A stretch of DNA of 63,786 bases, counting the filler, from Octopus bimaculoides (taxonomy: Eukaryota): the NCBI RefSeq assembly GCF_001194135.2. It is 5 parts of 4 records of this genome, joined end to end, with 100 filler letters (N's around TTAATTAATTAA, not from the genome) between each part and the next. Parts side by side here need not be neighbours in the genome. Positions count along the whole stretch, not along the records: positions 8,541 to 28,035 come from NC_069001.1; 4 more parts are not named here. One strand, 5' to 3'. The translations under genes were made by a program, and so were the position numbers. The notes under the pieces are model-generated. The model was not told where the DNA came from and made no database searches. It was given only the letters and a program-made list of their open reading frames with translations. Position 1 is the stretch's first letter. The number at the start of each line of letters is the position of its first letter. This document shows positions 4,914 through 28,155 of the stretch, piece by piece.

Positions 4914-5039
4914 AATATATATATATTTCTAGTATATATATATATATATACTAGAAAAGCAGAAAATTTGAGAAATGCCATTTTATATTTACACAAGAAC
5001 TATTTGAGGTAACCAATAAGCATCACAAAGCGTGATATC

Positions 5040-5330
5040 TTATTAACATTCACAAATGGTCAAAATGTACTCCATGCACTTCATGACAGCATTTTAATTG
5101 AGAAATCCAAGCTTGTGTGGCATTTTGAAGTGTTAGTTGAGGGATGTCATTTTCAATTCATCTGTGACAGTTATATAGCATCGATATTTCTGTATCTCTG
5201 CTAATAACAAGCTCCAGACACAGTAACCCGTCACATTTAAGTCTGGGCTCTTTGAAGGCCAATCTTCAGGTGCAATAATGAATCAGAAACCACCTGTTGC
5301 ACAGTTTATTGATGATCTATCTAATTAATG
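5040..5330 (-). mobile_element. Tc1/mariner-superfamily transposase 3' remnant
   Basis: Minus translation WPSKSPDLNVTGYCVWSLL (about 5205-5263) and a frameshifted C-terminus ending in HGVHFDHL* (about 5050-5085); these match the WPxxSPDLN and GGHFEH motifs. Confidence 0.65.
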
Positions 5331-5536
5331 CTTGTTAGTTTTGCCTTCAAATTTTCCACTTTTCTAGCGACCGCCCTTTATATGCATATGTTGACTCTAG
5401 ACTGGCATTGTGTTGTATTAGTTGTGATAATGAAGTGAAACCAAATAGTGTTATTTTAAAATCATTTAATGTGTGCGCTCAAGGTTTGCGTAAAATATAA
5501 CAGGAAATGCATCCAGAGGCACAAGTGTGACATATA

Positions 5537-5829
5537 GGTGCAGGCATGACTGTGTTAAGAAGCTTGCTTTGCAACCACTGGATCTGGGTTCAGTCCCACT
5601 GCATGGCACCCTAAGCAAGTGTCTTCTACCTACTATAGCCTCTGGCCAACCAAAGCCTTGTGGGTGGATTTCCTAGGCAGAAACTGAAAAAAGGCCATCA
5701 TATATATGTGTATATATTTATGCGTGTATATGTGTACCCCACCATTACTTGACAACCAATGTTAACTTATTTATGTCCCTGTAACATAGTGGTTTGGCAA
5801 AAGAGACTAATAGAATAAGTACTAGGCTT
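5537..5829 (+). mobile_element. SINE family A, diverged
   Basis: Head and body match other copies; 3' truncated. Confidence 0.8.
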
Positions 5830-8540: not shown

Positions 8541-8671
8541 TCGGCAACAAGAGATTCGATAGAACAAGTACAAGGCCTACAAAAGAATAAGTCCTGGGTT
8601 AGTTTCTTTGATTAGATCACTTTAGGGCGGTGCTCCAGCATGGCCGCAGTCAAATGACTGAAACAAGTAAA
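8541..8671 (+). mobile_element. SINE family A tail
   Basis: Tail motif directly after a gap. Confidence 0.8.
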
Positions 8672-8909
8672 TGTGTGTGTGCGTGGTTGAGGGGGGGGGT
8701 ATGTATTCGTTCTTTGATCACATTATCTGATATGCGCCCCCACCTTTTTTTTCTGTTGTTTCGAAAACTGTAGGCTGTGAACGGAGGGAGATTTTTAACT
8801 GTTATTTCTTGCACTTTCAAGAGAGACTGGTTCTCCCGTCCGACGGCGGAGTGGACCAACACAGCACCTTAACATGTACAACGGATACGCTGATACGGTT
8901 CTTCCAGTG

Positions 8910-10190
<1,281 letters not shown>

Positions 10191-10425
10191 CGCTGAATTA
10201 TCACAAAGCTATTAACATCATTTTTTTGGCTACAAACACGAAAACAATGAAATATAGATGGCTCCAGAGCTGCTGCCTCCTCCGCTTTCGTAGTTACCAC
10301 CATCATGGCTACCAGCCCTACGAGCCGACGTAGGAAAGAGCCTGCCTCCTACGTGGTCGCTCGAACTTCTAGAAATAGCAGTTAAAATCTGCTTCATGCC
10401 TCTGTATTAACACACTGCTCTCTGA

Positions 10426-10464
<39 letters not shown>

Positions 10465-10465
<1 letters not shown>

Positions 10466-10702
10466 GTAGCACCTACTATTAATAAAAAAATATTCAGACA
10501 AATACATAACAAAAATACCAGGACTTACAAATATATATAACATACAGAAAATTGCACTACTGGGTACTGCACACATTCTACGCAAAACACTTTCAATACA
10601 GTAAACATAAGAGCACCACAGCAAACCACAGCACGTACCCAAGGCGCACAGAGCTGCGCTCGGTAGTGAAGTGGAAAGCACGTTATAAAAATAAAACTAC
10701 TG
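10465..10702 (+). mobile_element. R4/Dong-like non-LTR 3' end inserted in (AAT)n
   Basis: KIPGLTNIYNIQKIALLGTAHILRKTLSIQ* followed by a 3' UTR; (AAT)n on both sides. Confidence 0.75.
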
Positions 10703-13164
10703 AATAATAATAATAATAATAATNNNNNNNNNNNNNNNNNNNNNNNNNNNNNNNNNNNNNNNNNNNNNNNNNNNNNNNNNNNNNNNNNNNNNNNNNNNNN
10801 NNNNNNNNNNNNNNNNNNNNNNNNNNNNNNNNNNNNNNNNNNNNNNNNNNNNNNNNNNNNNNNNNNNNNNNNNNNNNNNNNNNNNNNNNNNNNNNNNNNN
10901 NNNNNNNNNNNNNNNNNNNNNNNNNNNNNNNNNNNNNNNNNNNNNNNNNNNNNNNNNNNNNNNNNNNNNNNNNNNNNNNNNNNNNNNNNNNNNNNNNNNN
11001 NNNNNNNNNNNNNNNNNNNNNNNNNNNNNNNNNNNNNNNNNNNNNNNNNNNNNNNNNNNNNNNNNNNNNNNNNNNNNNNNNNNNNNNNNNNNNNNNNNNN
11101 NNNNNNNNNNNNNNNNNNNNNNNNNNNNNNNNNNNNNNNNNNNNNNNNNNNNNNNNNNNNNNNNNNNNNNNNNNNNNNNNNNNNNNNNNNNNNNNNNNNN
11201 NNNNNNNNNNNNNNNNNNNNNNNNNNNNNNNNNNNNNNNNNNNNNNNNNNNNNNNNNNNNNNNNNNNNNNNNNNNNNNNNNNNNNNNNNNNNNNNNNNNN
11301 NNNNNNNNNNNNNNNNNNNNNNNNNNNNNNNNNNNNNNNNNNNNNNNNNNNNNNNNNNNNNNNNNNNNNNNNNNNNNNNNNNNNNNNNNNNNNNNNNNNN
11401 NNNNNNNNNNNNNNNNNNNNNNNNNNNNNNNNNNNNNNNNNNNNNNNNNNNNNNNNNNNNNNNNNNNNNNNNNNNNNNNNNNNNNNNNNNNNNNNNNNNN
11501 NNNNNNNNNNNNNNNNNNNNNNNNNGCCCACCCCTCTCCTCTGGACCTCTCCCCCCACGCCTCCCTGTAATTCTCCGTGTATCTGCTCCACACACACACA
11601 AAAGACTGATGAGGGATAGCAGGAGGGGATCGTACGGCATCGATAGAGAGACATGTATAAAGTGAGTGAAGAGAAGACGTGAGAGGAAGGTAAATAAAAA
11701 AGCAGAGATAAAGAGAGAGAGTGTGTGTGTGTGTGCGTGTGAGAGAGAGAGATGGCATGGAAAGATAACGAGGTGAGAAGGAGACACAGAAAGTGAGTGA
11801 AGGAGAGAAAGAAAGATATAGAAGTGAGAGAGGGCAAGTGAAAGGGAAATATAGAAGTGAGTAAGAGAGAGAGAGACAGACAGACAGACAGAAATAATGA
11901 GGGAGAAAGAGCGAGACAAAAATATAGAAGTGATATAAAAGAGAGAGAAGGCAATAAAGAAAGACAGAAAAAGAGAGAGAGAGAGAGACAGAGACAGAGA
12001 AATGTAGAACTGATAGAAGGAGAGAGGGAAAATATAGACGAGAGAGAAAGCAATAGAGAAAGATAGAGAGAGACACAGAGAGAAATAAGGGGAAGTGATA
12101 GAGTGGATGAAAACGAAAAGAAGAAAAAAAGAAAGGAAACTCCAAGCTGAGTTTTAGCAATGCTATTATCCAAACTAGTCGTTGCACGCCTTATAATGAG
12201 TTGCTGTTAATATCTTCTACGTCTGCTTACTATAATAGTTTAAATACACTCTCTCACGTATTTATAAACACCTACAGACACATATACACACTTATCTATC
12301 TATATACACATACAAGTACATACACAAATACACATATATATACCTACACAAACACACATTCGTACATAGATTCATATATATATATATATATATGTATATA
12401 GATCCGTGTGTGGTGTGTTAATTATGCTAATATAACAAGTACTTATTTTTGCTTTTTATCTATCTCTGCATCATCATCTTCGCCAACTTCCATTAAGAAA
12501 CCGTTTTTGTGCCATTCGCTCTGAAATTCCTTCCTACCCTGATTAGCTGTGAATGCTGGAGAAATGAAAGGGAAGTATATATTTGTTAATCTACTTAACT
12601 AAGCCTGTTTAGCACCTTAAAACTAACCTAAAACTCTCTGAACGATTGCCAAAGGTGAAGAAATAATAGAAAACGGAACAAGATACTTCGACATAATCAT
12701 TTACAATAAGTTCTTATTCCCACAACAAACTATAAAACCTGGACTGCTTTGCTATGTTTTATTACACAAGCGAGATAATGATTAGACTATTAATTATACC
12801 CTGGTTTTAACTGACATTAACTCTAACAAACAGCAGGACCAACACTTTCAGGAACAACAATTACATTTACGACGCAGTGAAGTAATTTCGCGCGTTTACA
12901 TGGCTTGCTAGAAACAGCAGTCAAATCACAGCCAACCACCATTAAGAGAAAACAAAATATAATATATATATATATGTATATATATGTATAACAAATGAAC
13001 CTTCAGAAGAAATAAAACGGGAGTACATTGAGTTATGTAGTCCCGGATGAATATTGCTTGAAACAAACAAAAACAAGACGGGACCGGGACACTCACCACT
13101 TGCACCTTTGATCATCATAGGTCTGTCTTGTTCAACTCAGAACTGAGCTAAACGATAACAACAA

Positions 13165-13200
<36 letters not shown>

Positions 13201-13667
13201 CTACTAATGATATTTGTAATTAGTATAGCTTGCTTTTATTAATTACAAATACGACTAACGGAGGAGAGAGGTCGATGACAAAAGGAGTTAAAATAACGAA
13301 AAACCAAATTCTACATTGAAAAACAAACTCAGGACAAATATAGACACAGATAATAATAAAAAAAAAACGGTTTCTTTTCAACTATAAATACAATCTATAG
13401 TGTTTATACAAAGTATATACATATATATAATTATATATATTATGCCATGCTTTGCTGCAGAAGGATAATATAACGGCTGTGGAAGATATACATTGTATAT
13501 ATTTGAATCCTATTTCGTATCTACGTACATATGATCAGCACCTATCGTCAATACAAAGGTATTTTATATCACAGGTATGCTATTATAGATTGTCTTTTTA
13601 TCTCTTATGTTTATCGATGTTTATTTATCTATATACGCGTGTCTGCATATGTATTATAAGTGTCAGT

Positions 13668-13707
<40 letters not shown>

Positions 13708-13751
13708 GAGCGTGATGTTTTTGTGTAAGCATGTTTTATGCTATGTAAGCC

Positions 13752-13784
<33 letters not shown>

Positions 13785-14639
13785 ATATATNNNNNNNNNN
13801 NNNNNNNNNNNNNNNNNNNNNNNNNNNNNNNNNNNNNNNNNNNNNNNNNNNNNNNNNNNNNNNNNNNNNNNNNNNNNNNNNNNNNNNNNNNNNNNNNNNN
13901 NNNNNNNNNNNNNNNNNNNNNNNNNNNNNNNNNNNNNNNNNNNNNNNNNNNNNNNNNNNNNNNNNNNNNNNNNNNNNNNNNNNNNNNNNNNNNNNNNNNN
14001 NNNNNNNNNNNNNNNNNNNNNNNNNNNNNNNNNNNNNNNNNNNNNNNNNNNNNNNNNNNNNNNNNNNNNNNNNNNNNNNNNNNNNNNNNNNNNNNNNNNN
14101 NNNNNNNNNNNNNNNNNNNNNNNNNNNNNNNNNNNNNNNNNNNNNNNNNNNNNNNNNNNNNNNNNNNNNNNNNNNNNNNNNNNNNNNNNNNNNNNNNNNN
14201 NNNNNNNNNNNNNNNNNNNNNNNNNNNNNNNNNNNNNNNNNNNNNNNNNNNNNNNNNNNNNNNNNNNNNNNNNNNNNNNNNNNNNNNNNNNNNNNNNNNN
14301 NNNNNNNNNNNNNNNNNNNNNNNNNNNNNNNNNNNNNNNNNNNNNNNNNNNNNNNNNNNNNNNNNNNNNNNNNNNNNNNNNNNNNNNNNNNNNNNNNNNN
14401 NNNNNNNNNNNNNNNNNNNNNNNNNNNNNNNNNNNNNNNNNNNNNNNNNNNNNNNNNNNNNNNNNNNNNNNNNNNNNNNNNNNNNNNNNNNNNNNNNNNN
14501 NNNNNNNNNNNNNNNNNNNNNNNNNNNNNNNNNNNNNNNNNNNNNNNNNNNNNNNNNNNNNNNNNNNNNNNNNNNNNNNNNNNNNNNNNNNNNNNNNNNN
14601 NNNNNNNNNNNNNNAACACACACATACACACACACGTGA

Positions 14640-14790
14640 GATACTTTCAGTTTACTAAATCCACTCATATGGCTTTGATCGGCCCAGGGCTATAGTAAAG
14701 AGAGACTGGCCAAGATACCACGCAATGGAACTGAACACAAGACCACAGTTTGGCAAACAAACGTCTTAAGCCCAAAGCTACACCTATACC
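14640..14790 (-). mobile_element. SINE family A 5' half, old
   Basis: TTTCAGTTT...AAATCCACTCA...GCTTTG...GGAACTGAAC. Confidence 0.7.
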
Positions 14791-14816
14791 TAATTAAATT
14801 CAAGATTAAGATTCCA

Positions 14817-14857
<41 letters not shown>

Positions 14858-15175
14858 CTTTCTTTCTTTAACGACCCCAGAATAATGAGAACAAACTTAA
14901 CTGCAGAGCTATTTGAACCCTGATCTAAATAACCGTATTTAAATTTGCCCGATATCTATGATGATTTTGTAATCCATTGATAACCGATTAAATTGATCTC
15001 AATACTTGACTGGTACTTAATCGATTTTGGCAAAAATTATTCCGTACATGTGCATGTAACTTCGCTTCTGTGTGTGTATGTCTGCAAATGTAATAAGTAT
15101 TCTTCGAGTTTGTTTTCATTCTCCCTGGCTGTCTTTTAAATGTTTGTTTGTGTGTACATACACTCATGGAAACAC

Positions 15176-15588
15176 ACTCTTTTACTCTTTTACTTGTTTC
15201 AGTCATTTGACTGTGGCCATGCTGGAGCACCACCTTTTAATCGAGCTAATCGACTCCAGGACTTATTCTTTGTAAGCCTAGTACTTATTCTATCGGTCTG
15301 TTTTGCCGAACCGCTAAGTTACGGGAGACGTAAACACACCAGCATCGGTTGTCAAGCGATGTTGGGGTGACAAGCACAGACACACAAACATATATACACA
15401 CACGTACACATATATACATATATACGACGGGCTTCTTTCAGTTTCCGTCTACCCAATCCACTCACAAGGCTTTGGTCGGCCCGAGGCTGTAGTAGAAGAC
15501 ACTTGCCCAAGGTGCTACGCAGTGGGACTGAACCCAGAACCATGTGGTTGGTAAGCAAGCTACTTACCACACAGCCACTCCTACGCCT
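15176..15588 (-). mobile_element. SINE family A, full length, ungapped (best reference copy)
   Basis: Head, CORE-like block, internal (TA/CA)n, right arm and tail all present. Confidence 0.9.
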
Positions 15589-15646
15589 CACAAACACACA
15601 CATACACATACACACTCTCTCTTTCTCTCACACACACACACATGTG

Positions 15647-16024
15647 CACGAGAGGGTGCTGAAAAGTTCCTGGTTTGGGTAAGAGAAAACACAGGATGAT
15701 CAGTTAATTATGATTTTATTCAACATATTTCCCTCTCAGATTCACTCACTTATTGCAGAGGTCCTTCAGTTTTTCTAAGCCCCGTAAAAGAACTTGGAAG
15801 GCTGGAATTCCAACCAGGTTTTTCGCGACACCCTTAAAACCAGGAATTTTGGTAAATTTTCAGATTAACACCCGCACGATTTTCACTAGGGTGTTAGGGT
15901 TAGGGTTTTAGGAGCCGGGTTAGGATTAGGGTTAGGGTTTAGGGTTACGGTTAGGGTTAGGGACGGAATTAACGTGCGGGTGTTAATCTGAAAGTTTACC
16001 GGAATTTTTCAGGGTCTCCTCGTA
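15647..16024. mobile_element. Mariner-type MITE hosting a nested insertion in its right TIR
   Basis: Left end CACGAGAGGGTGCTGAAAAGTTCCTGGT versus the reverse complement of the reconstructed right end TACGAGGAGACCCTGAAAAATTCCTGGT; ends in TA. Confidence 0.7.
15851..16000. mobile_element. 150-bp MITE with 28-bp TIRs, 8-bp TSD and (TTAGGG)n interior (Merlin-like)
   Basis: TIR GGTAAATTTTCAGATTAACACCCGCACG, 1 mismatch with the right end; TSD GGAATTTT at 15843-15850 and 16001-16008. Confidence 0.9.
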
Positions 16025-16109
16025 GATTGTTTCTCGTTCTATGTGGAGGTGAGTTTAGAGATCTGTGTGTGTGTGTGTGTCTTTTTTCTTGTTCCATTCA
16101 CTGGGTCGT

Positions 16110-16537
16110 ATCCGTGCTGGGACACTACCTTGAAGGGTTTAGCTGAACAATTCGACCTCGACCTCGGTACTTCTATCGTTCTCCTTTTGCCAATCAACCG
16201 TCATGTTACGGAGACGTAAACAAACCAACACCAGTTATCAAGCGGTGTGGAGGGAAACGAACATCAAGAAACACAAACACACATTTATATAGATGTGTGT
16301 GTGTATGTTTGTTTATGTTTCTCTCACCCCCACCCCCAGTGCTTGTTAACCGATGCTGGTTTGTATATGTATGTATGACGGGCTTCTTTCAGTTTCCGTC
16401 TACTAAATCCCCACGGAAGGTCTTGGTCGGCCCGAGGCTATAGCAGAAGACATTTGCCCTAAGTACCATGCAGTTGGACAGAACCCGGAACCATGCGGTT
16501 GGGCAGCAAGCTTACCACACAGTCACGGCTGCGCCTA
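16110..16537 (-). mobile_element. SINE family A, diverged, with internal rearrangement
   Basis: Left arm 16375-16537; right-arm sequence appears twice (about 16190-16260 and 16330-16360). Confidence 0.75.
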
Positions 16538-17099
16538 TAAAGTGTGTGTGTGGAGGGGGGGGTTATGGTTTGTAAATTCGTGTATGGAGATGAGTGTAGA
16601 ATTCGTTCGGTCCACTAAATTAGATTGCTTGATCTGTATTCGTTCTTTAACGCCAATATTTGACCGCGAGGACAAACAATTCTCAAGGGACCCACAAAAA
16701 GCTTATGGGCGCTGGCCTTCATCTTATGTAAACCATGAAATAAACTAAAATTTGCATTGACATTTCATTAGACGCTTGGATAATGAGAGAGAGAGACAGA
16801 CAGACAGAGTGTGTGCGTGTGTGTGTGAAAACGCTGTTGATTATGTATCGAAGTATCAATTTAATGTTTGGACAGTGTGATCATGTTTGATCAATTAACC
16901 TGTAAGAAGTGTGTGTGTGTGTGTATTCATTTCCCAGATCTTTCGTATCACCGATATTTGCTGTTACACTCGCGCTAAAGACCTTGAGGTTATCTTGTAC
17001 TTGAACGACGTCAACTGAAACAAAGTTCTGATGTAATGGATGTGTGTGTGTGTGTGTGTGTGTCTTTTATCTTTATATTATATTTCATTTTTTTTTTAG

Positions 17100-17390
17100 A
17101 CCAGGCACTTTTTCTTTCGGTCTCCTTTACTGAGCCGCTAGGGGACACATACACACTAACACCGGTTGTCAAGCAGTGGTAGAGGGCAAACACAGGCACA
17201 AAGTCAAGTCACACACACACACACACACACACATACATGTGCCTGCGTGTGTACTTATATTTATATATGACTGACTTCTTTCAGTTTCCGTCTACCAAAT
17301 CCACGCTTGCCCATAGTGCCACGCTGTGAGACTGAACCCGGAGCCATGTGGCCAAGAAGCAAACTTCTCACCACACACTTATACCTGTAT
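17100..17390 (-). mobile_element. SINE family A, diverged
   Basis: Both arms recognisable around (CA)n. Confidence 0.75.
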
Positions 17391-17939
17391 GTGCATATAT
17401 GTAATGTATGAAACTTACTTGGAAAAGGATGCGTGGCGTTCGATGATATAATATAATAATATATAAATATATGCATATATCCATATATATATGTACACAC
17501 CTACATCTATATCTATACATACATGCATATATGGGTACAGGACATGTTAAACACAATGAGAAAGGAAAACAGAAAACGAACTTTTTCGAACAACGTATAA
17601 AACAAACAGAGAAACGAAACATGCAACATAAGGAGTATACCCCTTCGTCAGTTGTCCCTGTTCCAATGTATATGTATATATGTATGTGTGTCTGCATACA
17701 CATATTTAATTCTATGTATGTGTATATGGTTAATTATACGTAAGTGAACGTATCTGTATGTATTTGGAAATATATATATATATATAAATACACACACACA
17801 CATGCACGTGCGCGTTGTTTTAACAAAACAAGAGAAAAGAATATTGAATACAGTAGCAATAAATGTGAAATTTCTCAGAGGTTAACAATAACAGTTCAGA
17901 AAACGTGTGTCGATCTACATGATATTTGTATAACATATA

Positions 17940-18092
17940 TACGACGGGCTTCTTTCAGTTTCTGTTTACCAAATCCACTCACAAGGCTTTGGTCGTCCCG
18001 AGGCTATAGTAAAAGATATTTGCCCAAGGTGCCACGAAGTGGGACTGAACCCGGAACCATGTGGTTGGTAAGCAAGCTACTTACCACAAAGC
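17940..18092 (-). mobile_element. SINE family A 5' half
   Basis: Near-consensus left arm. Confidence 0.85.
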
Positions 18093-18333
18093 CTACAAAT
18101 TTTGACAACAAATTAAAAATTATTCCTTTTCGTTATATGGGTTCATAAAAAGTAAAACAAAACAAAACATGATTAGATTATATTATTGCTAATAGATTTT
18201 CGATTTATAGCTCTTTTAGATGCAGTTTTGTATNNNNNNNNNNNNNNNNNNNNNNNNNNNNNNNNNNNNNNNNNNNNNNNNNNNNNNNNNNNNNNNNNNN
18301 NNNNNNNNNNNNNNNNNNNNNNNNNNNNNNNNN

Positions 18334-18367
<34 letters not shown>

Positions 18368-18707
18368 TATATGTATATATATAGACATTACATGGCTAAA
18401 TGTATATTAAATAACATGGAAGCAAAAAACACTTCATTTCTTGAAAATGATCTCTGCTTTCAGAGGTTGTAAGTTCATCTGTTGGCACCACCTCTAATGA
18501 GAAGGGTAGATAACCTGCAGATTCACATTGCTTTTAAATTGTCATTTCATTTATGAGCAAACACCTGAATTGTCTGAAGCATTTGGGACATACTTACATA
18601 TATATGAATATACATATGAATATATATATTTAATAATACGTATGTATATATATATATTTAATTATAGGGATATATAAAGATATATATACATATATATACA
18701 TATATAT

Positions 18708-18748
<41 letters not shown>

Positions 18749-18860
18749 CAGGGTGTCCACAAGGTCTGGGTACATGAAGTAAATAAAATCATAATATAAA
18801 CAATTAAATATAAGAAATAATAATTTCTTAAACCACATTCTCCTAGCAGGCATATTCTGC
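18749..18860. mobile_element. Tc1/mariner-like TIR fragment after (TA)n
   Basis: TA|CAGGGTGTCCAC start; truncated by a SINE; the partner TIR is not seen. Confidence 0.4.
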
Positions 18861-18861
18861 C

Positions 18862-19477
18862 CGTGGCTGTGTGGTAAGTAGCTTGCCTACCAACCACATG
18901 GTTCCGGGTTCAGTCCCACTGCGTGGCACCTTGGGCAAGTGTCTTCTACTATAGCCTCGGGCCGACCAAAGCCTTGTGAGTGGATTTGGTAGACGATAAC
19001 TGAAAGAAGGAAGTCGTATATATGNNNNNNNNNNNNNNNNNNNNNNNNNNNNNNNNNNNNNNNNNNNNNNNNNNNNNNNNNNNNNNNNNNNNNNNNNNNN
19101 NNNNNNNNNNNNNNNNNNNNNNNNNNNNNNNNNNNNNNNNNNNNNNNNNNNNNNNNNNNNNNNNNNNNNNNNNNNNNNNNNNNNNNNNNNNNNNNNNNNN
19201 NNNNNNNNNNNNNNNNNNNNNNNNNNNNNNNNNNNNNNNNNNNNNNNNNNNNNNTATATATATATATATATGGATGTGTGTGTATATGTTTGTCCCCCCA
19301 ACATTGCTTAACAACCAATGCTGGTGTGTTTACGCTCCTGTAACTTAGCAGTTCGGCTAAAGAGACCGATAGAATAAGTACTAGGCTTAAAAATAATAAG
19401 TCCTGGGTTCGATTAGCTCGACTAATGTCGGTGCTCAGCATGGCCGCAGCTAAATGACTGAAACAAGTAAAAGAGTA
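18862..19477 (+). mobile_element. SINE family A, full length, gap at the internal microsatellite
   Basis: Left arm 18862-19020, right arm 19270-19477. Confidence 0.88.
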
Positions 19478-19973
19478 TGGTTACACAGGAGATGTAATAG
19501 AAACACAGGTATATTAACTGTGAACATGTGCTTCATATATGACAGATACAAGGATGCTGTAAAAATTCTGAGCCCACAAGAAATTGATTCTCTTCACAAC
19601 TCAGGTGGATTATTAGAAGCATTTATAGATTTTGTTATCTGTGAGATATAATCAGCAGGAGAAATTGTTGCTTTGAAAGTATAGCATTCAGGGTAAGAAT
19701 AAGCTTGTAAAAGTTATGGGTACTATCAGGGTTTTTTGACGAAGCTTATAAAAGTTGAGGGTACCAGCAGGGTTTTGTGATGAAGCTCATTTGGCCATCA
19801 CTACTGCCGACTGCAGGAGTCCAGGGAACAAGGGCAAACGCAAGTGTGTGTGTGTGTCTGTGTATTATTGCTGGTTGCTGTTTTCAACAGGAGGCAAGTC
19901 GAAGGTTGCTTTAGCAAGTGTTTCATATTCACGCAGTAACTGCAGGCTCGTTGATGATGAAGACAAGCATATA

Positions 19974-20229
19974 TTCTTCTATTTATTTCAGTCATTTGAC
20001 TGTGGCCATGCTGGAGCACCGCCTTTAGCCAAGCAAATCTTATTCTTAGTAATACTGGTACTTATTCTTTGTAAGCCCAGTACTTATTCTTTGTAAGCCT
20101 AGGACTTATTCTTTGTAGGCCTAGTACTTATTCTATCGGTCTCTCTTGCCGAACCGATTACTGATGGGGATGTAAACACACCAGCATCGGTTGTCAAGCG
20201 ATGTTGTGGCGGACAAACACAGACATACA

Positions 20230-20261
<32 letters not shown>

Positions 20262-20430
20262 NNNNNNNNNNNNNNNNNNNNNNNNNNNNNNNNNNNNNNN
20301 NNNNNNNNNNNNNNNNNNNNNNNNNNNNNNNNTTGTAAAAGACACTTGCCCAAGGTGCCACACAGTGGGACTGAACCCAGAACCATGTGGTTGGTAAGCA
20401 AGCTACTTATCACACAGCCACTCCTGCACC
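19974..20430 (-). mobile_element. SINE family A with an expanded 22-bp tail repeat
   Basis: Both arms present; TACTTATTCTTTGTAAGCCYAG about 3.5 times at 20059-20136. Confidence 0.85.
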
Positions 20431-20524
20431 TTCGGATATGCTGAAGAACTAGAAACAAAGTAGCCGAAAAATATGCAATGTAGTATCATTAGATATGAAA
20501 TGAATGATATCTGCTTCATTGTAT

Positions 20525-20800
20525 AGATTGATGGGTAGATTGTATGACACTTGTGTCAGGACTGTAATGCTGCATGGTGGTGAGACAAGGACTTTGAGTG
20601 TAATGGGTGAATACTTGAGCAGACTAGAAAGGAATAAATTTAGTATACTCTGTTGAATATGCATGAATGTTATAGTATAAATGGGCTGAGAGAAAAACTG
20701 GACATAAGGGGAGTCAGATGTAGTCTGCTAGAAAGAAGATTGCTCTGGTATGGACATGTAATGTGTATGGATGAAGACAGCAGTATAAGACATTCCGATA
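20525..20800 (+). mobile_element. RTE-clade RT C-terminal fragment
   Basis: GRLYDTCVRTVMLHGGET...RLERN...LREKLDIRGVRCSLLERRLLWYGHVMCMDED. Confidence 0.8.
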
Positions 20801-20889
20801 AGTAGATTATCTCCCTTGGCTAGGTGGCTCTCCGTGCAAACAATTCTACATCTGCAGACTACCCACGCCATTGTTGTTGTGTGTCATCT

Positions 20890-20995
20890 CATGAATATTA
20901 AGCAGCTCGAGTTAAAGAATTATTTGAGAAGGTCACTGGCAATGTGCATCCAGTTGATTGCAACTGCACTGCAGGGAAAGAGCCTGTCTAATTAT
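20890..20995 (+). pseudogene. SWIM-like zinc-finger remnant (transposon accessory ORF)
   Basis: Translates RVKELFEKVTGNVHPVDCNCTAGK, then AC after a frameshift; resembles the CxCxAG..CxH SWIM motif. Short and disrupted. Confidence 0.4.
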
Positions 20996-21345
20996 TTTGA
21001 CTTTTTTTCCCCCTTGTATAATAAATTGTATTTTTCATGGTTGTAAGGAAATAAATGTATAATTAAAACAATAAATAATAAAAGTTTATAGCATAGACTC
21101 CATCTAAGAATATCTGAAGAAGGAATTGTATTCCGAAATATCATCGGATTATAGATAACTTAATTACAACAAATATATAGTCCATTTTTTTATATTATAG
21201 TGCATCGTTGTACCTTTCAAAACTTTTTATGCTTTACAATAAATAATAAATAAATGAGACTTAATTTTGAATATTTTTTTTTTTATCCCTATCATATTTA
21301 TCAAATACAAATGCACAGTCACATACACATGTCTCCGAAGTTTAT

Positions 21346-21990
21346 CTAATAAACGGATGGCAAGGGGTAATCTGTCGATGGTCCTTTAGATTTGATGAAA
21401 TGCTGGGAGCAAATCTGGCTATTTGCAGTGTAAACAAAGTCTTTCTTTACAAGTCTCCATCTCTGGAACCAAATAAGATGAATAGTGACATTTGCAGGGT
21501 ATCTATGAAGTGAAATAACTTTGCTGTCTACATTCTCCCCTCTATAGTGGAGGCGCAATGGCCCAGTGGTTAGGGCAGCGAACTCGCGGTCATAGGATTG
21601 CGGTTTCGATTCCTAGACCGGGCGTTATGAGTGTTTATTGAGCGAAAACATCTAAAGCTCCATGAGGCTCCGGCAGGGGATGGTGGCGAACCCTGCTGTG
21701 CTCTTTCACCACAACTTTCTCTCACTCTTACTTCCTGTTTCTGTTGTGCCTGTAATTCAATGGGTCAGCCTTGTCACACTCTGTGTCACGCTGAATATCC
21801 CCGAGAAATACGTCAAGGGTGCACTTGTCTGTGGAGTGCTCAGCCACTTGCACGTTAATTTCACGAGCAGGCTGTTTCGTTGATCGGATCAACTGGAACC
21901 TTCGTCGTCATAACCGACGGAGTGCCAACCAATCTCCCCTCTATAATTACTGCATTTACAACAGTATTTTCACGATTTCTTCGGAGACAT
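21346..21990 (-). pseudogene. THAP-domain (C2CH zinc finger) coding remnant split by a SINE
   Basis: Removing 21547-21932 plus one TSD copy joins a single frame: MSPKKS*KYCCKCSNYRGENVDSKVISLHRYPANVTIHLIWFQRWRLVKKDFVYTANSQICSQHFIKSKGPSTDYPLPSVY*. It has the N-terminal Cys pair, HRYP, W, CSQHF and an AVPTIF-like PLPSVY box. Confidence 0.8.
21547..21932 (+). mobile_element. Full-length tRNA-derived SINE (family C) with 13-bp TSD
   Basis: tRNA-like head (TGGCCCAGTGGTTAGG A-box, GGTTTCGATTCC B-box); TSD TCTCCCCTCTATA at 21534-21546 and 21933-21945. Confidence 0.85.
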
Positions 21991-22291
21991 CATATTAACC
22001 GGTCATACACCCTGTGAGTCGTTAGTCTCGCAGAAGTAGAAGCAAATCACATACAGGAGAGAGTTTGAATCAGGGGTGGATAACTACCTTATTGGAATGG
22101 CCCCATAAAGAAATGCCAATCACTTAATGTAGATGGAGCTTGTAGAAAACATGGGATGAAGTGGTGATGGCTGAATCTCAGGACCTTGAACCCTCACAGG
22201 GAAGATAACAAAGGACCAAGATGAATGGCAATATATTGTTCTCTGGAAGACCTGCCTAACTTGATGAAGTACTAAAAGTGGTGTCATCATC

Positions 22292-22830
22292 ATCAAATAC
22301 CGCCAAGGTTGACTTTGCCTTTCATCCTTTCGGTGTCGATAAATTAAGTACCAGTTGGGTACTGAGGTCGATCTAATCGGCTGCCTCTCCTGCCCCCAAA
22401 ATTTCGGGCCTTGTGCCTAGTGTAGAAAAGAATTGTTAGCACGCCAGGAGAAATGTTTAGCGGTATTTCGTCTGTCTTTTCGTTCCGAGTTCAAATTCCA
22501 CCGAGGTCGACTTTGCCTTGTATCCTTTGGGGGTCGATAATCAAGTACCAGTTGCATACTGGAGACGATCTAATTGACTGGTCCCCTCCCCAAAAGATTC
22601 GGGCCTTGTGACTAAAGTAGAAAAAATTGTTAGCACGCCGGACGAAATGCTTGGCGGCGTTTCGTCCGTCTTTACGTTCTGAGTTCAAAGTTCACCAAGG
22701 TCAGTTTTACCTTTCATCCTTTCGGGATCAATAAATTGGTATCATTTGAACGCTAGGGTTCGATGTAATCGACTTAGCCCCTTCCTCCACCCCGAAACTA
22801 CTGGGCTTGTGCCAAAATTTGAAATCAATA
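22292..22830 (+). mobile_element. Head-to-tail trimer of SINE family B (Meta-domain-like)
   Basis: Three units with GACTTTGCCTTTCATCCTTTCGGGGTCGATAAATTAAGTACCAG-like cores; junctions near 22432 and 22627. Confidence 0.85.
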
Positions 22831-23679
22831 AATGATCAAGTTTTAACAGTTTAGACATTTCATAATTTGTGTCTTCTGACGTCACACGAGAACGGCTTCG
22901 ATGGTGATGACCACGACCGAGACAACAAGATTAGCAACAACAACAACAACACTGATATAAGGATAACCACAAGAACAACAACATCAATAACTAAAACACA
23001 CATAAAAAAAGGACAATAGAAATTACAATTAACAAACTATAGAATAATTGCTCGGAGATATTTTAGCACCAGAAGTGCTTGCGGAGGGAAGCCGTATATT
23101 GTGTGCGTGCGCACGTCGTCTCGATTGTTGGAGATGAATAACGGNNNNNNNNNNNNNNNNNNNNNNNNNNNNNNNNNNNNNNNNNNNNNNNNNNNNNNNN
23201 NNNNNNNNNNNNNNNNNNNNNNNNNNNNNNNNNNNNNNNNNNNNNNNNNNNNNNNNNNNNNNNNGGGGGGAGAAAAGAAAAGACATTTTCCTTTTTCAAA
23301 TTGAAAAAATAAAAATAGAATAAAATAAGATATTAAAATTTTATTATTTCAGCAAGCTAAACTAATTTTAAAAGATGTACAGATTATAAATTTCAATGTC
23401 TTTGTCCTAAGAAGGCGACGGAATGAATCAGTGGAGATGTAAGAATAATTGATGATGGGAGTGTTGGTGTTGGTGGCAGCTTGTTCGCGCGTGTTAGTGT
23501 GTGTATGTGTATGTGTGTGTATGTGTGTGTGTGTGTGTGTGTGTATTTATGCACAACCAGTTTGGTTCACCGCCCGGCACCATCCTGTCTTTCCTTCTCT
23601 CTTCCTATACCACACCTTAATTTATTAGAACGTATTGTCTTCTCACTCGCCCTCACACACACGCACACGCACGCACGCA

Positions 23680-23730
<51 letters not shown>

Positions 23731-23904
23731 CAGAGCTGAGGGGAAGAACCCGAGCAGATCGTTCTCCATGGTGCACGAACGTACGGTGGTGTGTCTCGCG
23801 AGTGAAAATACCGAGTCGAAGAACCAACGATTAAATTAACAACATTATTATTTTGTAACTATATTAGTTGTAACAGGGAACAACCGAATCGATGTGGTGA
23901 TTTA

Positions 23905-23936
<32 letters not shown>

Positions 23937-23997
23937 NNNNNNNNNNNNNNNNNNNNNNNNNNNNNNNNNNNNNNNNNNNNNNNNNNNNNNNNNNNNN

Positions 23998-24033
<36 letters not shown>

Positions 24034-24207
24034 CAGAGCTGAGGGGAAGAACCCGAGCAGATCGTTCTCCATGGTGCACGAACGTACGGTGGTGTGTCTC
24101 GCGAGTGAAAATACCGAGTCGAAGAACCAACGATTAAATTAACAACATTATTATTTTGTAACTATATTAGTTGTAACAGGGAACAACCGAATCGATGTGG
24201 TGATTTA

Positions 24208-24245
<38 letters not shown>

Positions 24246-24249
24246 TATA

Positions 24250-24406
24250 CGGCGGGCTTCTTTCAGTTCCCGTCTGTCAAATCCATTGAAATGGCTTTGG
24301 TCGGCCCGAGGCTATAGGAGAAGACACTTGCCCAAGATGCCACGCAGTGGGACTCAACCTGGAACCATGTGGTTGGTAAGCAAGCTACTTACTACACAGC
24401 CACTCC
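24250..24406 (-). mobile_element. SINE family A 5' half
   Basis: Near-consensus left arm ending at (TA)n. Confidence 0.85.
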
Positions 24407-24522
24407 AATATATATATATATATAATAATTAATTCTCTCCCTCATACTCACACGTTTGTGTTCTTTATTCCAGTTCTTTGCGTTCTGAAGTCAATGTTTA
24501 CCTTTCTTCCTTCTGATTAAAT

Positions 24523-24884
24523 CATCGGTTCTGTACCGGGGTGCATATGACCATTTGGAGTCCATAGAACATTTTTTTGGAGACCATACAAGCAAAATTG
24601 CAAATTGGGAGATCCACAGGATTATTTTAAGAACAGATAAAAAAATTTTGACTTAGACGTATTTATTGCAAGAATGCAAGAAACAAGTAACAACTAGATT
24701 TCATTCTCTAGCGTTTTACTTAGTTCAACATGTTTCTGGTCCCTGAGTCATGTTCTATTGCAATTCTACACAACTGAACTTGGGAAGGGCAAAATAACAT
24801 TGAATAGATGTAGGGGTCCCTCCAGGTGAAATAGTAATCAAAGGGGTTCATAGATAGAAAAAGAAATTGGTTGAGAACCTCTAG
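24523..24884. mobile_element. Degenerate hAT-type MITE
   Basis: Ends resemble CAGTGGTTCTCAACC / GGTTGAGAACC; no clear TSD. Confidence 0.5.
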
Positions 24885-25219
24885 CTTAGATGAATAAGTC
24901 CTTGTCTAAGACGGTGGTTCGGTGGAAAAATTAGCGCATTAGACAAGATATTTTGTTAGCATGCTAGCATGCATTCAGCTCTTTGAGTTCCGGGTTCAAA
25001 TCGCACCGGGAGCTACTCGTGTGATAGACCCGTCACTCGTTTCATGAGCACCACCTGATCATTAAGTGTTTTTAGTGGAGTCCTGCTCTGTTGCAAGTAT
25101 CGGGACCAGACCCTGCCCGCTTTGAGGACTCTTTCTTCCCTCTTTTCCCCCACGAGGTTCGTTCCTGAAAACGATTATGAGCCCTGCCTCCATCTTAATA
25201 AGTGATTAGAAAGCAAGAA

Positions 25220-25415
25220 TCTGGCAGAATAGTTGGGACGTCAGACGAAATGCTTATAGCGGCGTTTCCTCCGTTTCTTTTCTGAGTTCAAATTCTGCCG
25301 TGGTTAACTTTGCCTTTCATCCTTTCAGGATTGACAGAAATAAGTACCGGTAAAGTACTGGGGTCAATGTAATTGACTGACTCCTATCGCTCAAAAATAC
25401 TGGCCTTGTACCAAA
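25220..25415 (+). mobile_element. SINE family B
   Basis: TGGCAGAA...GAAATGCTTA...GAGTTCAAAT head plus core. Confidence 0.8.
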
Positions 25416-25431
25416 ATTAGAAAGAAAAATG

Positions 25432-25477
<46 letters not shown>

Positions 25478-26029
25478 TATGTATTTCTTCTATCTTAATG
25501 AATAAAAATTCTTCGGATAGAATAAATGGGTTAATAGAAACCAATGTAGCAAAGAACAGAAAATAACTGTGGTGTTGTTCCTGTTTTTAAGGCAGGAACT
25601 CCTTGAAATTTTGGGTATTTGAGTATATTTAAAAATTTAAGGAATGGAGAAAACGCATNNNNNNNNNNNNNNNNNNNNNNNNNNNNNNNNNNNNNNNNNN
25701 NNNNNNNNNNNNNNNNNNNNNNNNNNNNNNNNNNNNNNNNNNNNNNNNNNNNNNNNNNNNNNNNNNNNNNNNNNNNNNNNNNNNNNNNNNNNNNNNNNNN
25801 NNNNNNNNNNNNNNNNNNNNNNNNNNNNNNNNNNNNNNNNNNNNNNNNNNNNNNNNNNNNNNNNNNNNNNNNNNNNNNNNNNNNNNNNNNNNNNNNNNNN
25901 NNNNNNNNNNNNNNNNNNNNNNNNNNNNATATATATATATATATATACCTTTTTTCCAGTTCGATCGCTATCTGCGTTCCTTCCTGTCTGTCTCTCCCCT
26001 CTCTCTTCATATATGTTCTCTGCGTGAGA

Positions 26030-26560
26030 GCCTCTACGTGGTCATATCGCTAGCTAGAAACAGAAGCCAGTTCCTCATGTATTGTCTTGAAAAGGTCGGA
26101 GACACATTGGATGATGACCTGCTGAAGCATTTATCGTTCGTGAAACGGACGGCGTGATCATGGCCAGAATGTCTTTGATAAAAGATCTACTTAATCCTTC
26201 GATCTAAACAACAGCAACACCAACACTAACCTTAGCTCTTTGAGAACATCTGTATGGTCGTTCGACTCGCTAGATATAACAGTCAAAATCTTCCTTCAAA
26301 ATCATATTCTACAATCTTCAAAAGCAGAACATATTGGTTACCATGCATAATGCTACATCATCTGCCCAAATACACTGATGAGGTGGTCATCGATGGAATG
26401 TCTTTGATCAGAAGTCCACTTAATCAGAGTTGACCAGCAACAGAAACTTCTCCACCCGTACCTACCACATGACGCCACTCGACCTGCTAGAAATATCAGC
26501 CAGCTCCCTTCAAATTGCATCCTACCCTCTTAAAAACGGATGCGTTGTATTACCATATTG
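26030..26560. repeat. Three tandem diverged copies of unclassified repeat family D
   Basis: Recurrent GGTC.TTCGAC..GCTAGAAA...CAGC and GGTCAT.GC..GAATGTCTTTGAT blocks; other copies at about 9525-9692, 10345-10400 and 12895-13150. Confidence 0.65.
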
Positions 26561-28155
26561 TCCTGGGTTCTTTCCTCATAGGAAAAGACAGTTTAGAATG
26601 CATTTCAATAGCAACGATAACAAACTTCATTTCTGTGAGGCATAACCATCCGTCCGTCTGTCTGTCTGTCACCCTTTTATCTGCCTACATTCTATCACTA
26701 TCTATTGGTATTCCTGTAGAGTAGAGTCGGAAATCATCTAGTGCCACGACAAATACCATGTTTGCATCGGTTTAAGTGGTTTAAGTATCCTATTATAAGA
26801 ATCTGTCAAAAAAGAAAGAGGGAGAGAGAGAGAGAGGGATCTATGTGTGAATGCTTTTGCCCCTCCTTCCCTTTCCGTAAATTTTTTAGTTTCGTCTCGT
26901 TTTGGAAAAAAATTTCGGGGAATTTAGTTTCGCATAATTTTAAAGAAATAATCTTCATGTTCACATATAAGTTTGTAAAATAAAAGAAAAATGACAAAAA
27001 ATGTTCAAAAGAAAGTCAAAACTGAAAGACTAAAGGAGAAGGAGTCCCCTTTCAATAGTTGTGGGAGGCTGAGGTGTTGGAAATTTACGATTTTACGATT
27101 TCCAGCGCTCTAGATAATATCCGACTCTATTCTCTCGGAATGCCTTCTATCTATTATATCTCCGTATCAGCTCTGCAGTCCATCACCGCAAAACTTATCT
27201 ATTTTTCCCTTCTTTCCATCCACCTATCGTTTCCACTATCGCCACCACAACCACCACCTACAGCATCATGACAGTCGCCGCCGCCACCACCACCACTACC
27301 AGCATCAACATCATCATCTCTCTCTCTCTCTCTCTCATCTCTCCATCTCATTCGATAGTAGCACCACCATGAATAATATGCTTTTAGACATAGGTAAATT
27401 ATTAAATCAGAACAAAAAACACAATCTAGTTTTATCTCTGTAGATAAAGACACGGAGATACATGTGTGTATGTGTATGCGCGCGCATATATCTATGTATA
27501 TGTACGCACACATTCACACACATCCAATAGAAAGAGAGACAGATAGTTATTGTAAGGGTGGCGGTGGTGATAGGGTGGTGACGGCGCATTAAGCATGACT
27601 CTCCTCTCGTTTGTTTATCATGTCTCTCCTATTGTTACTTTATAATTGCTTTTCCATTTGCTGTTACTTAAGCTGCAGCTAATATGATAGCGCTGTCCCC
27701 CCACCTCTTTCCCTCTGCCTCCTTGTTCTCTCCCTTACAGTGGTAGTAGTAGTAGTAGTAGTAGTAAATGCTGTAGCACTAGTAATAATGACATGGCGGC
27801 GGCGGCGGCGGAGTCGTCGGAGGGTATATGTGTATGGGGGGAAGGATTGGAGATGACCTTATCTCGTCAAAACCGAACAATAAATATCTCCGTCTCTGTC
27901 TCTCTCTTCCTTCGGGGTCCCCCCTCCCCCTGTATCCCCCCCCCCTCTAGAATTCTAATTTTCTCATGATGACGAAAGAAAGACAGAGAGAGACAAAGAG
28001 GCAAAGCGTTATCCAGTTCCACATATATTTGATTCNNNNNNNNNNNNNNNNNNNNNNNNNNNNNNNNNNNNNNNNNNNNTTAATTAATTAANNNNNNNNN
28101 NNNNNNNNNNNNNNNNNNNNNNNNNNNNNNNNNNNTATATATATATATGTATATG

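What the first reader, a model, noticed from the sequence alone, without database searches (positions are those of the whole stretch)
21329..21990. Complete THAP domain hidden by a SINE insertion
The ORF track shows only the C-terminal part. Excising SINE C (21547-21932) and one 13-bp TSD restores an 81-codon frame from ATG 21990 with all THAP landmarks (Cys pair, HRYP, W, CSQHF, PLPSVY) and one internal TGA, plausibly CGA>TGA decay. THAP domains occur in P-element, Kolobok, Harbinger/ISL2EU transposases and in domesticated host genes. This locus is therefore either a transposon relic or a SINE-killed gene, and the empty-site allele may still exist.
Basis: partly seen in the sequence, partly recalled or inferred. 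Interest (0 to 1): 0.75.

Follow-up and report, generated by a model that had tools for sequence, protein, structure and literature searches.

The report
Dead transposon THAP exon split by SINE

Summary
A 386-bp insert (21547-21932, + strand) lies between two exact 13-bp direct repeats. Removing it and one repeat restores a minus-strand frame (ATG 21993/21990 to TAG 21346) that passes Pfam's THAP threshold (28.4 bits against a cut-off of 23.9). All four zinc ligands are present (C-X2-C-X47-C-X2-H). Eleven relatives align across the junction in one ungapped stretch, including three Octopus bimaculoides gene models and bivalve proteins.

The longer relatives of this THAP subtype carry THAP + HTH_Tnp_4 + DDE_Tnp_4, which is the ISL2EU-type transposase of the PIF/Harbinger (PHIS) superfamily. 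In two fetched loci, the THAP part is exon 1. It ends at a GTAAGT donor, and an intron and a catalytic exon 2 follow. One of these loci has long terminal inverted repeats.

The window copy holds exon 1 only and carries three lesions:
- a TGA at codon 8, where close relatives have Arg;
- a 2-nt deletion at the exon's end, probably shared with a SINE-free octopus copy;
- the SINE itself.

No exon 2 and no inverted repeats were found in the piece. The SINE is a dispersed octopus repeat. It is a transposon relic, not a SINE-killed gene. Interest is low.

The parts
21946..21993 (-). Start of the THAP exon: ATG ATG (21993-21988), in-frame TGA at 21972-21970 (codon 8), first zinc-ligand pair C11 (21963-21961) and C14 (21954-21952).
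   Evidence: This N-terminal stretch hits the same relatives on its own (E 3e-8 to 1e-4 in a 1.4-kb subject).
21933..21945 (.). Target-site duplication, copy next to the SINE 3' end. It reads TATAGAGGGGAGA on the minus strand and encodes Y17-R18-G19-E20 plus the first base of N21.
   Evidence: Exact 13-mer found at only two places in the window; also family D11.
21547..21932 (+). SINE insert of 386 bp, antisense to the THAP frame. It has a tRNA-like head (exact A box TGGCCCAGTGG at SINE positions 12-22; B-box-like GGTTTCGATTCC at 56-67), no poly(A), and ends ...CCAACCAA.
   Evidence: Flanked by an exact 13-bp TSD. ARAGORN at a relaxed setting finds a degenerate tRNA at SINE 7-78, but default ARAGORN and Rfam find no tRNA. 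The antisense translation is 82-86% identical to the C-terminal ends of three unrelated O. bimaculoides gene models, so it is a dispersed repeat.
21534..21546 (.). Target-site duplication, copy next to the SINE 5' end.
21349..21533 (-). Rest of the THAP domain: LHRYP (P33), W42, C62-S-Q-H65-F66 (21411-21397), GP, and PLPSVY ending at 21349.
   Evidence: Pfam THAP; tblastn hits from more than 100 THAP-family proteins; codon coordinates.
21321..21348 (-). Decayed end of exon 1. TAG 21348-21346 is created by a 2-nt deletion relative to bivalve and ENA relatives. About 22 nt follow that align with ...PNKVF(K/Q)TS. GTATGT at 21326-21321 aligns with the GTAAGT splice donors of the relatives.
   Evidence: DNA alignment A5; donor sequences in L001 and L002. 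The assignment of this tail is an inference from a 3-sequence alignment.

Best explanation
The locus is the decayed first coding exon of an ISL2EU-type DNA transposon (PIF/Harbinger-ISL2EU-Spy, 'PHIS', superfamily) in an Octopus genome. A tRNA-related SINE later inserted into it. In intact elements of this kind, the N-terminal THAP zinc finger is the DNA-binding part of a THAP + HTH + DDE transposase that cuts and pastes a TIR-bounded element of about 4.8 kb. Here only exon 1 survives, and it cannot make a protein. It has a stop at codon 8, a 2-nt deletion that ends the frame just before the old splice donor, a 386-bp SINE between the first Cys pair and the rest of the domain, and no catalytic exon downstream. 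The SINE arrived by LINE-mediated target-primed reverse transcription and left a 13-bp target-site duplication. Shown: the TSD, the restored frame, THAP membership, colinearity with relatives, the domain architecture and the exon-intron structure of relatives, and the dispersed nature of the SINE. Inferred: that this copy once belonged to a full element, the order of the lesions, and the retrotransposition mechanism.
For: - TSD and insert.
- Restored frame and THAP score above the gathering cut-off.
- A profile of the family hits the solved structures of THAP2, THAP1 and THAP11 (E 7e-9 to 2e-7).
- An exhaustive HMM search gave 119 relatives. The long ones (P0009, P0010, P0013, P0017, P0043, P0063) carry THAP + HTH_Tnp_4 with or without DDE_Tnp_4.
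- Among 115 relatives scanned, 12 have HTH_Tnp_4 and 6 have DDE_Tnp_4, against 1 with a P-element-type domain.
- The named relatives are molluscs: Octopus bimaculoides (3), Sinanodonta, Haliotis, Dreissena and Mactra.
- In L001 (Sinanodonta) and L002, the THAP exon ends at TS|GTAAGT. The HTH + DDE exon follows 0.4-0.5 kb downstream on the same strand.
- The L002 element has TIRs of about 170 bp and spans about 4.77 kb. This fits the published ISL2EU description of a THAP + HTH + DDE transposase and a mean length near 4.84 kb (PMC4482050; PMC4122938).
- The window exon aligns base for base with these exons. The only indel in the coding part is a 2-nt deletion.
- The octopus copies are themselves damaged: P0001 has C->Y at a zinc ligand and a 4-aa duplication; P0124 has LYKYP and QHS.
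- The SINE is a dispersed repeat.
Against: - No TIRs, no AT target duplication and no exon 2 were found in the piece. This copy's membership in a mobile element therefore rests on homology of one 82-codon exon.
- The piece has assembly gaps (for example 20262-20332) that could hide sequence.
- No YqaJ-type second ORF was seen in L002.
- All four zinc ligands are still intact in the window copy, so the decay is moderate.
- The tRNA origin of the SINE head is weakly supported: default ARAGORN and Rfam are silent.
- The species of the window is not proven.
Confidence: 0.85

Rival explanations
1. A host (domesticated) THAP-only gene that was working until the SINE landed in it, i.e. a SINE-killed gene.
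For: Short THAP-only gene models of 86-109 aa are annotated in O. bimaculoides. The four zinc ligands are intact in the window copy. The perfect 13/13 TSD suggests the SINE insertion is not ancient.
Against: There is a TGA at codon 8, before the first Cys, with no in-frame start after it. The frame ends through a 2-nt deletion just before a position that is a splice donor in relatives, and the SINE-free copy P0001 ends at the same place, so the truncation probably predates the SINE. The octopus models have ligand or core substitutions. The short 'proteins' end in read-through of a GTAAGT donor, so they look like exon-1 calls and not like true small genes.
Confidence: 0.05
2. A copy of a non-autonomous, internally deleted ISL2EU derivative, or a segmental duplicate of an already dead copy, that never had exon 2 at this site.
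For: The window and P0001 share MMSPKKS, the LHRYP Tyr and the ...PLPS[VI]Y-stop ending, which suggests multiplication after inactivation. No exon 2 lies within reach downstream.
Against: No TIRs were found flanking the exon. No second copy of the flanks exists in the piece. Only four octopus copies are known to me. A LINE-like fragment and another SINE lie downstream (20335-20810), so later insertions or deletions could equally explain the loss of exon 2.
Confidence: 0.1
3. A relic of a different THAP-bearing transposon, such as a P element (THAP9-like) or Kolobok.
For: THAP domains occur in those superfamilies (established knowledge). One of the 115 relatives carries a TNP-like RNase H domain.
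Against: The nearest multi-domain relatives (E 1e-16 to 1e-12) are all HTH_Tnp_4/DDE_Tnp_4 proteins. The family-specific motifs (KYCCxCSNYRGK, GP, PSIFPxKxFKTS) and the exon boundary are shared with them.
Confidence: 0.02

Closest known systems
ISL2EU group of the PHIS (PIF/Harbinger-ISL2EU-Spy) DNA transposon superfamily
   Same: The THAP subtype here is the one fused to HTH_Tnp_4 + DDE_Tnp_4 in the long relatives. That is the transposase architecture published for ISL2EU (PMC4482050, PMC4122938). A related element in L002 is about 4.77 kb with long TIRs and AT-rich flanks.
   Different: The window copy has only exon 1, with no catalytic exon, no TIRs and no AT target duplication. The YqaJ exonuclease ORF described for most autonomous ISL2EU elements was not seen in L002. 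The L002 TIR starts GT..., not the usual GG.
Octopus bimaculoides THAP-type gene models A0A0L8HI11, A0A0L8HAV8 and A0A0L8FQ40
   Same: They are 68-77% identical over the domain by BLASTP. A0A0L8HI11 is colinear from MMSPKKS to ...PLPSIY-stop and has Arg where the window has TGA.
   Different: They lack the SINE. They carry their own defects: a 4-aa duplication and Cys->Tyr at a zinc ligand in HI11; LYKYP and QHS in HAV8; a foreign N-terminus in FQ40.
Human THAP1, THAP2 and THAP11 DNA-binding domains (solved structures 2ko0/2jtg, 2d8r, 2lau)
   Same: They share the C2CH zinc-finger signature and conserved P, W, F and P positions. The family profile matches them at E 7e-9 to 2e-7.
   Different: Those are host transcription factors. 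The sequence here is a pseudogenised transposase exon.
tRNA-derived SINEs of octopus (OK, OR1 and OR2 of Ohshima and Okada 1994, cited in PMC4758252)
   Same: A short insert of about 0.39 kb with A/B-box-like motifs, no poly(A), a TSD, and dispersed copies in O. bimaculoides.
   Different: I could not compare it with the published consensus sequences, so the family and any central domain (CORE, Ceph, Deu) are not assigned.

Membership tests
THAP domain (PF05485) | Score at or above Pfam's gathering threshold | tested here: met
   The joined peptide scores 28.4 bits against a cut-off of 23.9. The C-terminal half alone scores 23.4 bits.
THAP domain (PF05485) | C2CH zinc signature C-X2-4-C-X35-53-C-X2-H plus conserved P, W, F and P | tested here: met
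   C11-X2-C14-X47-C62-X2-H65, with P33, W42, F66 and P79. The consensus spacing is from established knowledge of the family.
THAP domain (PF05485) | Zinc-dependent, sequence-specific DNA binding | not testable with these tools
   This needs biochemistry, and the frame is not translatable as it stands.
ISL2EU-type transposon (PHIS superfamily) | Transposase with an N-terminal THAP followed by HTH and a DDE (DDE_Tnp_4) core | tested here: not met
   This is met by relatives (P0010, P0017, L001, L002) but not by the window copy. No HTH/DDE match exists anywhere in 8541-28035. The window is therefore filed as a relic, not as an element.
ISL2EU-type transposon (PHIS superfamily) | Terminal inverted repeats (6-259 bp, usually starting GG) | tested here: not met
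   No inverted pair flanks the exon; the best is 15 nt at E 0.22, inside a tandem repeat. TIRs of about 170 bp are present in the related L002 element.
ISL2EU-type transposon (PHIS superfamily) | AT target-site duplication (target A|AT|T) | tested here: inconclusive
   The element ends are not identifiable in the window. In L002 both ends abut ATATATAT, which is compatible but ambiguous.
ISL2EU-type transposon (PHIS superfamily) | Second ORF with a YqaJ exonuclease domain (most autonomous copies) | tested here: not met
   None in the window. None in the ORFs of L002 that I scanned.
SINE (non-autonomous retroposon) | Short insert flanked by a target-site duplication | tested here: met
   A 386-bp insert with an exact 13-bp TSD.
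SINE (non-autonomous retroposon) | Many dispersed copies in the genome | tested here: met
   SINE-derived segments 82-86% identical occur in three unrelated O. bimaculoides gene models. There is no second copy in this piece. The copy number was not measured.
SINE (non-autonomous retroposon) | Pol III head derived from tRNA (A and B boxes, cloverleaf) | tested here: inconclusive
   There is an exact A box and a B box with one extra base. ARAGORN finds a degenerate tRNA only at a relaxed threshold. Nothing appears at default settings or in Rfam.

The most novel reading that the evidence does not exclude
The exon-1-only THAP copies in octopus (the window, A0A0L8HI11 and perhaps others) share the same truncating lesion, so they multiplied after the catalytic part was lost. 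This could mark a non-autonomous ISL2EU derivative family. Less likely, it could mark a former THAP-only product that acted as a transposition repressor, by analogy with truncated P-element repressors. A0A0L8HI11 could even be the orthologous SINE-free site in another species, which would date the SINE insertion.
Probability: 0.1. Interest if true: 0.3.

Novelty: new member of a known kind. Interest (0 to 1): 0.12.

Why it matters
It matters little beyond annotation. It is a clean example of nested mobile elements, a SINE inside a DNA-transposon relic. It shows that intron-naive or automated gene models in octopus and other molluscs pick up transposase first exons as "THAP-type domain-containing proteins" and pick up SINE antisense frames as protein C-termini. 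It also records ISL2EU-like transposase remnants in an octopus genome; I found no paper in the searchable library that mentions the two together. The exact TSD makes this SINE insertion a usable presence/absence marker if the empty site exists in other individuals or species.

Tried and rejected
- Pfam scans of six-frame translations around the locus (19255-23144 on the + strand, 20333-23144 on the minus strand) found only the THAP hit and no transposase domain.
- tblastn of 120 family proteins, including full-length transposases, against the whole piece found only the THAP exon. A cluster of weak hits at about 11560-11763 (best E 0.025) lies in low-complexity Ser/Leu/Cys-rich sequence, and I rejected it.
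- A search for TIRs between the upstream and downstream flanks found nothing credible.
- A self-comparison found no second copy of the exon's flanks or of SINE C in the piece.
- Exact-product look-ups for the three octopus proteins and for the window's 70-aa ORF found nothing on record. No octopus genomic DNA could be fetched, so the species, the copy number and the empty site remain open.
- All Rfam hits in the piece are microsatellite matches to miRNA models far below their gathering scores, and I rejected them.
- The joined peptide could not be submitted to the search of protein representatives, which accepts only sequences exactly as they occur in the window. I used an alignment of exact sequences instead.
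- Structure prediction was not run. Sequence evidence for THAP was already sufficient.

Full report
**What is in the sequence.** On the minus strand the window reads ATG ATG TCT CCG AAG AAA TCG TGA AAA TAC TGT TGT AAA TGC AGT AAT TAT AGA GGG GAG A. An unrelated sequence follows. The mechanical ORF list shows only a 70-aa ORF further on (21346-21558, minus strand), and that ORF carries the C-terminal part of a THAP-like sequence. The 13-mer TCTCCCCTCTATA (+ strand) occurs exactly twice in the window, at 21534-21546 and 21933-21945, bracketing 386 bp at 21547-21932 (also family D11). Removing the insert and one repeat gives a single frame:

MMSPKKS*KYCCKCSNYRGENVDSKVISLHRYPANVTIHLIWFQRWRLVKKDFVYTANSQICSQHFIKSKGPSTDYPLPSVY*

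The TGA lies at 21972-21970 and the final TAG at 21348-21346.

**Is it a THAP domain, and are the halves really contiguous?**
- The joined peptide scores 28.4 bits on Pfam THAP (gathering score 23.9, E 2.8e-6). The C-terminal half alone scores 23.4 bits, just under the threshold.
- The zinc signature is complete: C11-X2-C14-X47-C62-X2-H65, with P33, W42, F66 and P79.
- A word-indexed protein search found two Octopus bimaculoides proteins. One of them, A0A0L8HI11 (P0001, 86 aa), is 77% identical over 100% of the query. It runs straight across the SINE insertion point, has Arg where the window has TGA, and ends at the same ...PLPSIY-stop.
- With the SINE in place, tblastn gives two separate colinear matches for each of ten of eleven relatives; for the eleventh, P0017, only the C-terminal half matched. 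With the flanks joined, each relative gives one ungapped match across the junction (P0001 residues 1-86, E 2e-48; the bivalve protein P0122 residues 1-81, E 1.5e-37).
- A profile of the family matches the solved THAP domains of human THAP2, THAP1 and THAP11.

**What kind of THAP is it?** An exhaustive HMM search with an alignment of exact sequences gave 119 relatives at E <= 1e-3. They share a distinctive pattern: KYCCxCSNYRGK ... SLHRFP ... W.QR ... LCSxHF.G..GP ... PSIFPxKxFKTS. The long relatives (P0009, P0010, P0013, P0017, P0043, P0063) combine THAP with HTH_Tnp_4, and several also have DDE_Tnp_4. Across the 115 relatives scanned:

| Pfam domain | Relatives |
|---|---|
| THAP | 104 |
| HTH_Tnp_4 | 12 |
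| DDE_Tnp_4 | 6 |
| P-element-type RNase H | 1 |

. THAP + HTH + DDE is the transposase architecture published for the ISL2EU group of the PHIS superfamily. That group has AT target duplications, TIRs of 6-259 bp and a mean length near 4.84 kb (PMC4482050; PMC4122938). The named relatives are all molluscs: three O. bimaculoides models, Sinanodonta woodiana, Haliotis rufescens, Dreissena polymorpha and Mactra antiquata.

**Gene structure in relatives.** I fetched two loci, L001 (Sinanodonta chromosome) and L002 (an ENA contig). In both, the THAP part is a separate first exon that ends ...(Q/K)-T-S|GTAAGT. The HTH + DDE part follows 0.4-0.5 kb downstream on the same strand. This explains why so many short "THAP proteins" in the databases end in ...TSVS and then diverge: they are exon 1 read through the splice donor. 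The L002 copy is bounded by inverted repeats of about 170 bp, built from a repeated palindromic motif (8607-8784 and 13226-13372). It spans about 4.77 kb, and both ends abut ATATATAT. That fits a mobile ISL2EU-like element, although I found no YqaJ ORF in it.

**State of the window copy.** The empty-site exon aligns base for base with the L001 and L002 exons. The only indel in the coding part is a 2-nt deletion right after ...GTT TAT T, which creates the TAG. The window's GTATGT at 21326-21321 lines up with the GTAAGT donors of the relatives. The copy therefore holds the whole of exon 1, with three lesions:
1. TGA at codon 8. Close relatives have Arg there, and a CGA-to-TGA change in the TCG-CGA context is plausible but inferred.
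2. The 2-nt deletion at the exon's end.
3. The SINE.

No HTH or DDE sequence exists anywhere in 8541-28035, and no inverted repeats flank the exon. P0001 lacks the SINE yet ends at the same Tyr-stop. The truncating deletion therefore probably predates the SINE insertion, and the two copies probably descend from an already broken ancestor. This is an inference from protein sequences only. The other octopus copies carry their own defects: Cys-to-Tyr at a zinc ligand and a 4-aa duplication in P0001, and LYKYP and QHS in P0124. This pattern is neutral decay, not a recently disabled gene.

**The SINE.** The insert has an exact A box (TGGCCCAGTGG) and a B-box-like motif with one extra base. ARAGORN calls a degenerate tRNA at SINE 7-78 only at a relaxed threshold; at default settings ARAGORN and Rfam find nothing. 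The insert has no poly(A) and ends ...CCAACCAA. It has no second copy in this piece. I translated its longer ORFs and used them as a probe. The antisense frame (...ALRRL.RRRFQLIRSTKQPAREINVQVAEHSTDKCTLDV...) is 82-86% identical to the C-terminal ends of three unrelated O. bimaculoides gene models: an MFS transporter, an RGM-domain protein and an adenosine deaminase. Similarity begins within about two codons of the TSD-defined 3' end. The insert is therefore a dispersed octopus repeat whose 3' boundary agrees with the TSD. The perfect 13/13 TSD suggests that the insertion is younger than the relic. The mechanism, LINE-driven target-primed reverse transcription, is inferred from general knowledge of SINEs.

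**Context.** The neighbourhood is repeat-rich and has no recognisable genes. It contains:
- a 194-bp tandem repeat at 22293-22734, with a further copy at 25226-25426;
- a second, more abundant SINE-like family with five copies in the piece;
- a LINE reverse-transcriptase C-terminal-like fragment at about 20534-20805;
- many microsatellites and assembly gaps.

The window is most likely from an Octopus species, given the hits to O. bimaculoides for both the THAP exon and the SINE. The species was not proven, because no octopus genome DNA could be reached.

**Verdict.** The "SINE-killed gene" branch is not supported. The existence of an empty-site allele is untested. This is a new member of a known kind and of low interest. 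Its main use is as an annotation caution and a possible presence/absence marker. No paper in the searchable library mentions ISL2EU together with octopus, so the record of this relic type in octopus may be a small addition.

Noticed in passing
L002:8607-13372 and flanks (ENA contig ERZ26273219 ctg27254): A seemingly intact THAP + HTH + DDE transposon of about 4.77 kb, with TIRs of about 170 bp made of repeated AGCCATTTCATGAAATGGCT palindromes. It sits inside a protein-primed polymerase-B-like gene: the right flank reads ...LDANNLYGWAMS..., with a weak DNA_pol_B_2 hit. A double-jelly-roll capsid-like gene lies a few kb away (4361-5548). This looks like a transposon nested in a Polinton-like or virus-like element.
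   Followed up: partly
P0135, P0136, P0137 (O. bimaculoides UniRef gene models): Three unrelated gene models (an MFS transporter, an RGM domain protein, an adenosine deaminase) end in the same antisense-SINE peptide of about 40-55 aa (...LRRLRRR.QLIRSTEQPAREINVQVAEHSTDTCTLNVV...). This is either SINE exonisation or annotation run-on into a SINE.
   Followed up: partly
window 20534-20805 (+ strand): Two frames read like the C-terminal tail of a non-LTR retrotransposon reverse transcriptase (GRLYDTCVRTVMLHGGETRTL......LLERRLLWYGHVM...), broken by stops and a frameshift. This is a LINE 3' fragment lying where exon 2 of the transposase would be expected. The identification is from memory of LINE motifs; Pfam gave no hit.
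   Followed up: no
window 22293-22734, also 25226-25426: A tandem repeat of a 194-bp unit (2.3 copies, 80% matches) immediately upstream of the THAP exon, with a further copy of about 70-74% identity 2.5 kb away in the same orientation. Its family is unknown.
   Followed up: partly
window 20335-20431, 18009-18093, 18863-18949, 15492-15588, 24321-24406; inverted arms 19296-19407 and 20098-20209: A second, more abundant short repeat family (92-94% identical fragments in both orientations), distinct from SINE C. Several copies abut assembly gaps or microsatellites.
   Followed up: no
window 11560-11763 (minus strand): Several THAP-family proteins give weak tblastn hits here (best E 0.025) in Ser/Leu/Cys/His-rich low-complexity sequence next to an N gap. 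I judged them spurious.
   Followed up: partly
(database proteins P0003-P0008, P0121): Many short 'THAP-type domain-containing proteins' from metagenome, Logan and genome sources end ...KTSVS and then diverge. The 'VS' is the GTAAGT splice donor read through. They are first exons of ISL2EU-like transposases miscalled as whole proteins.
   Followed up: yes
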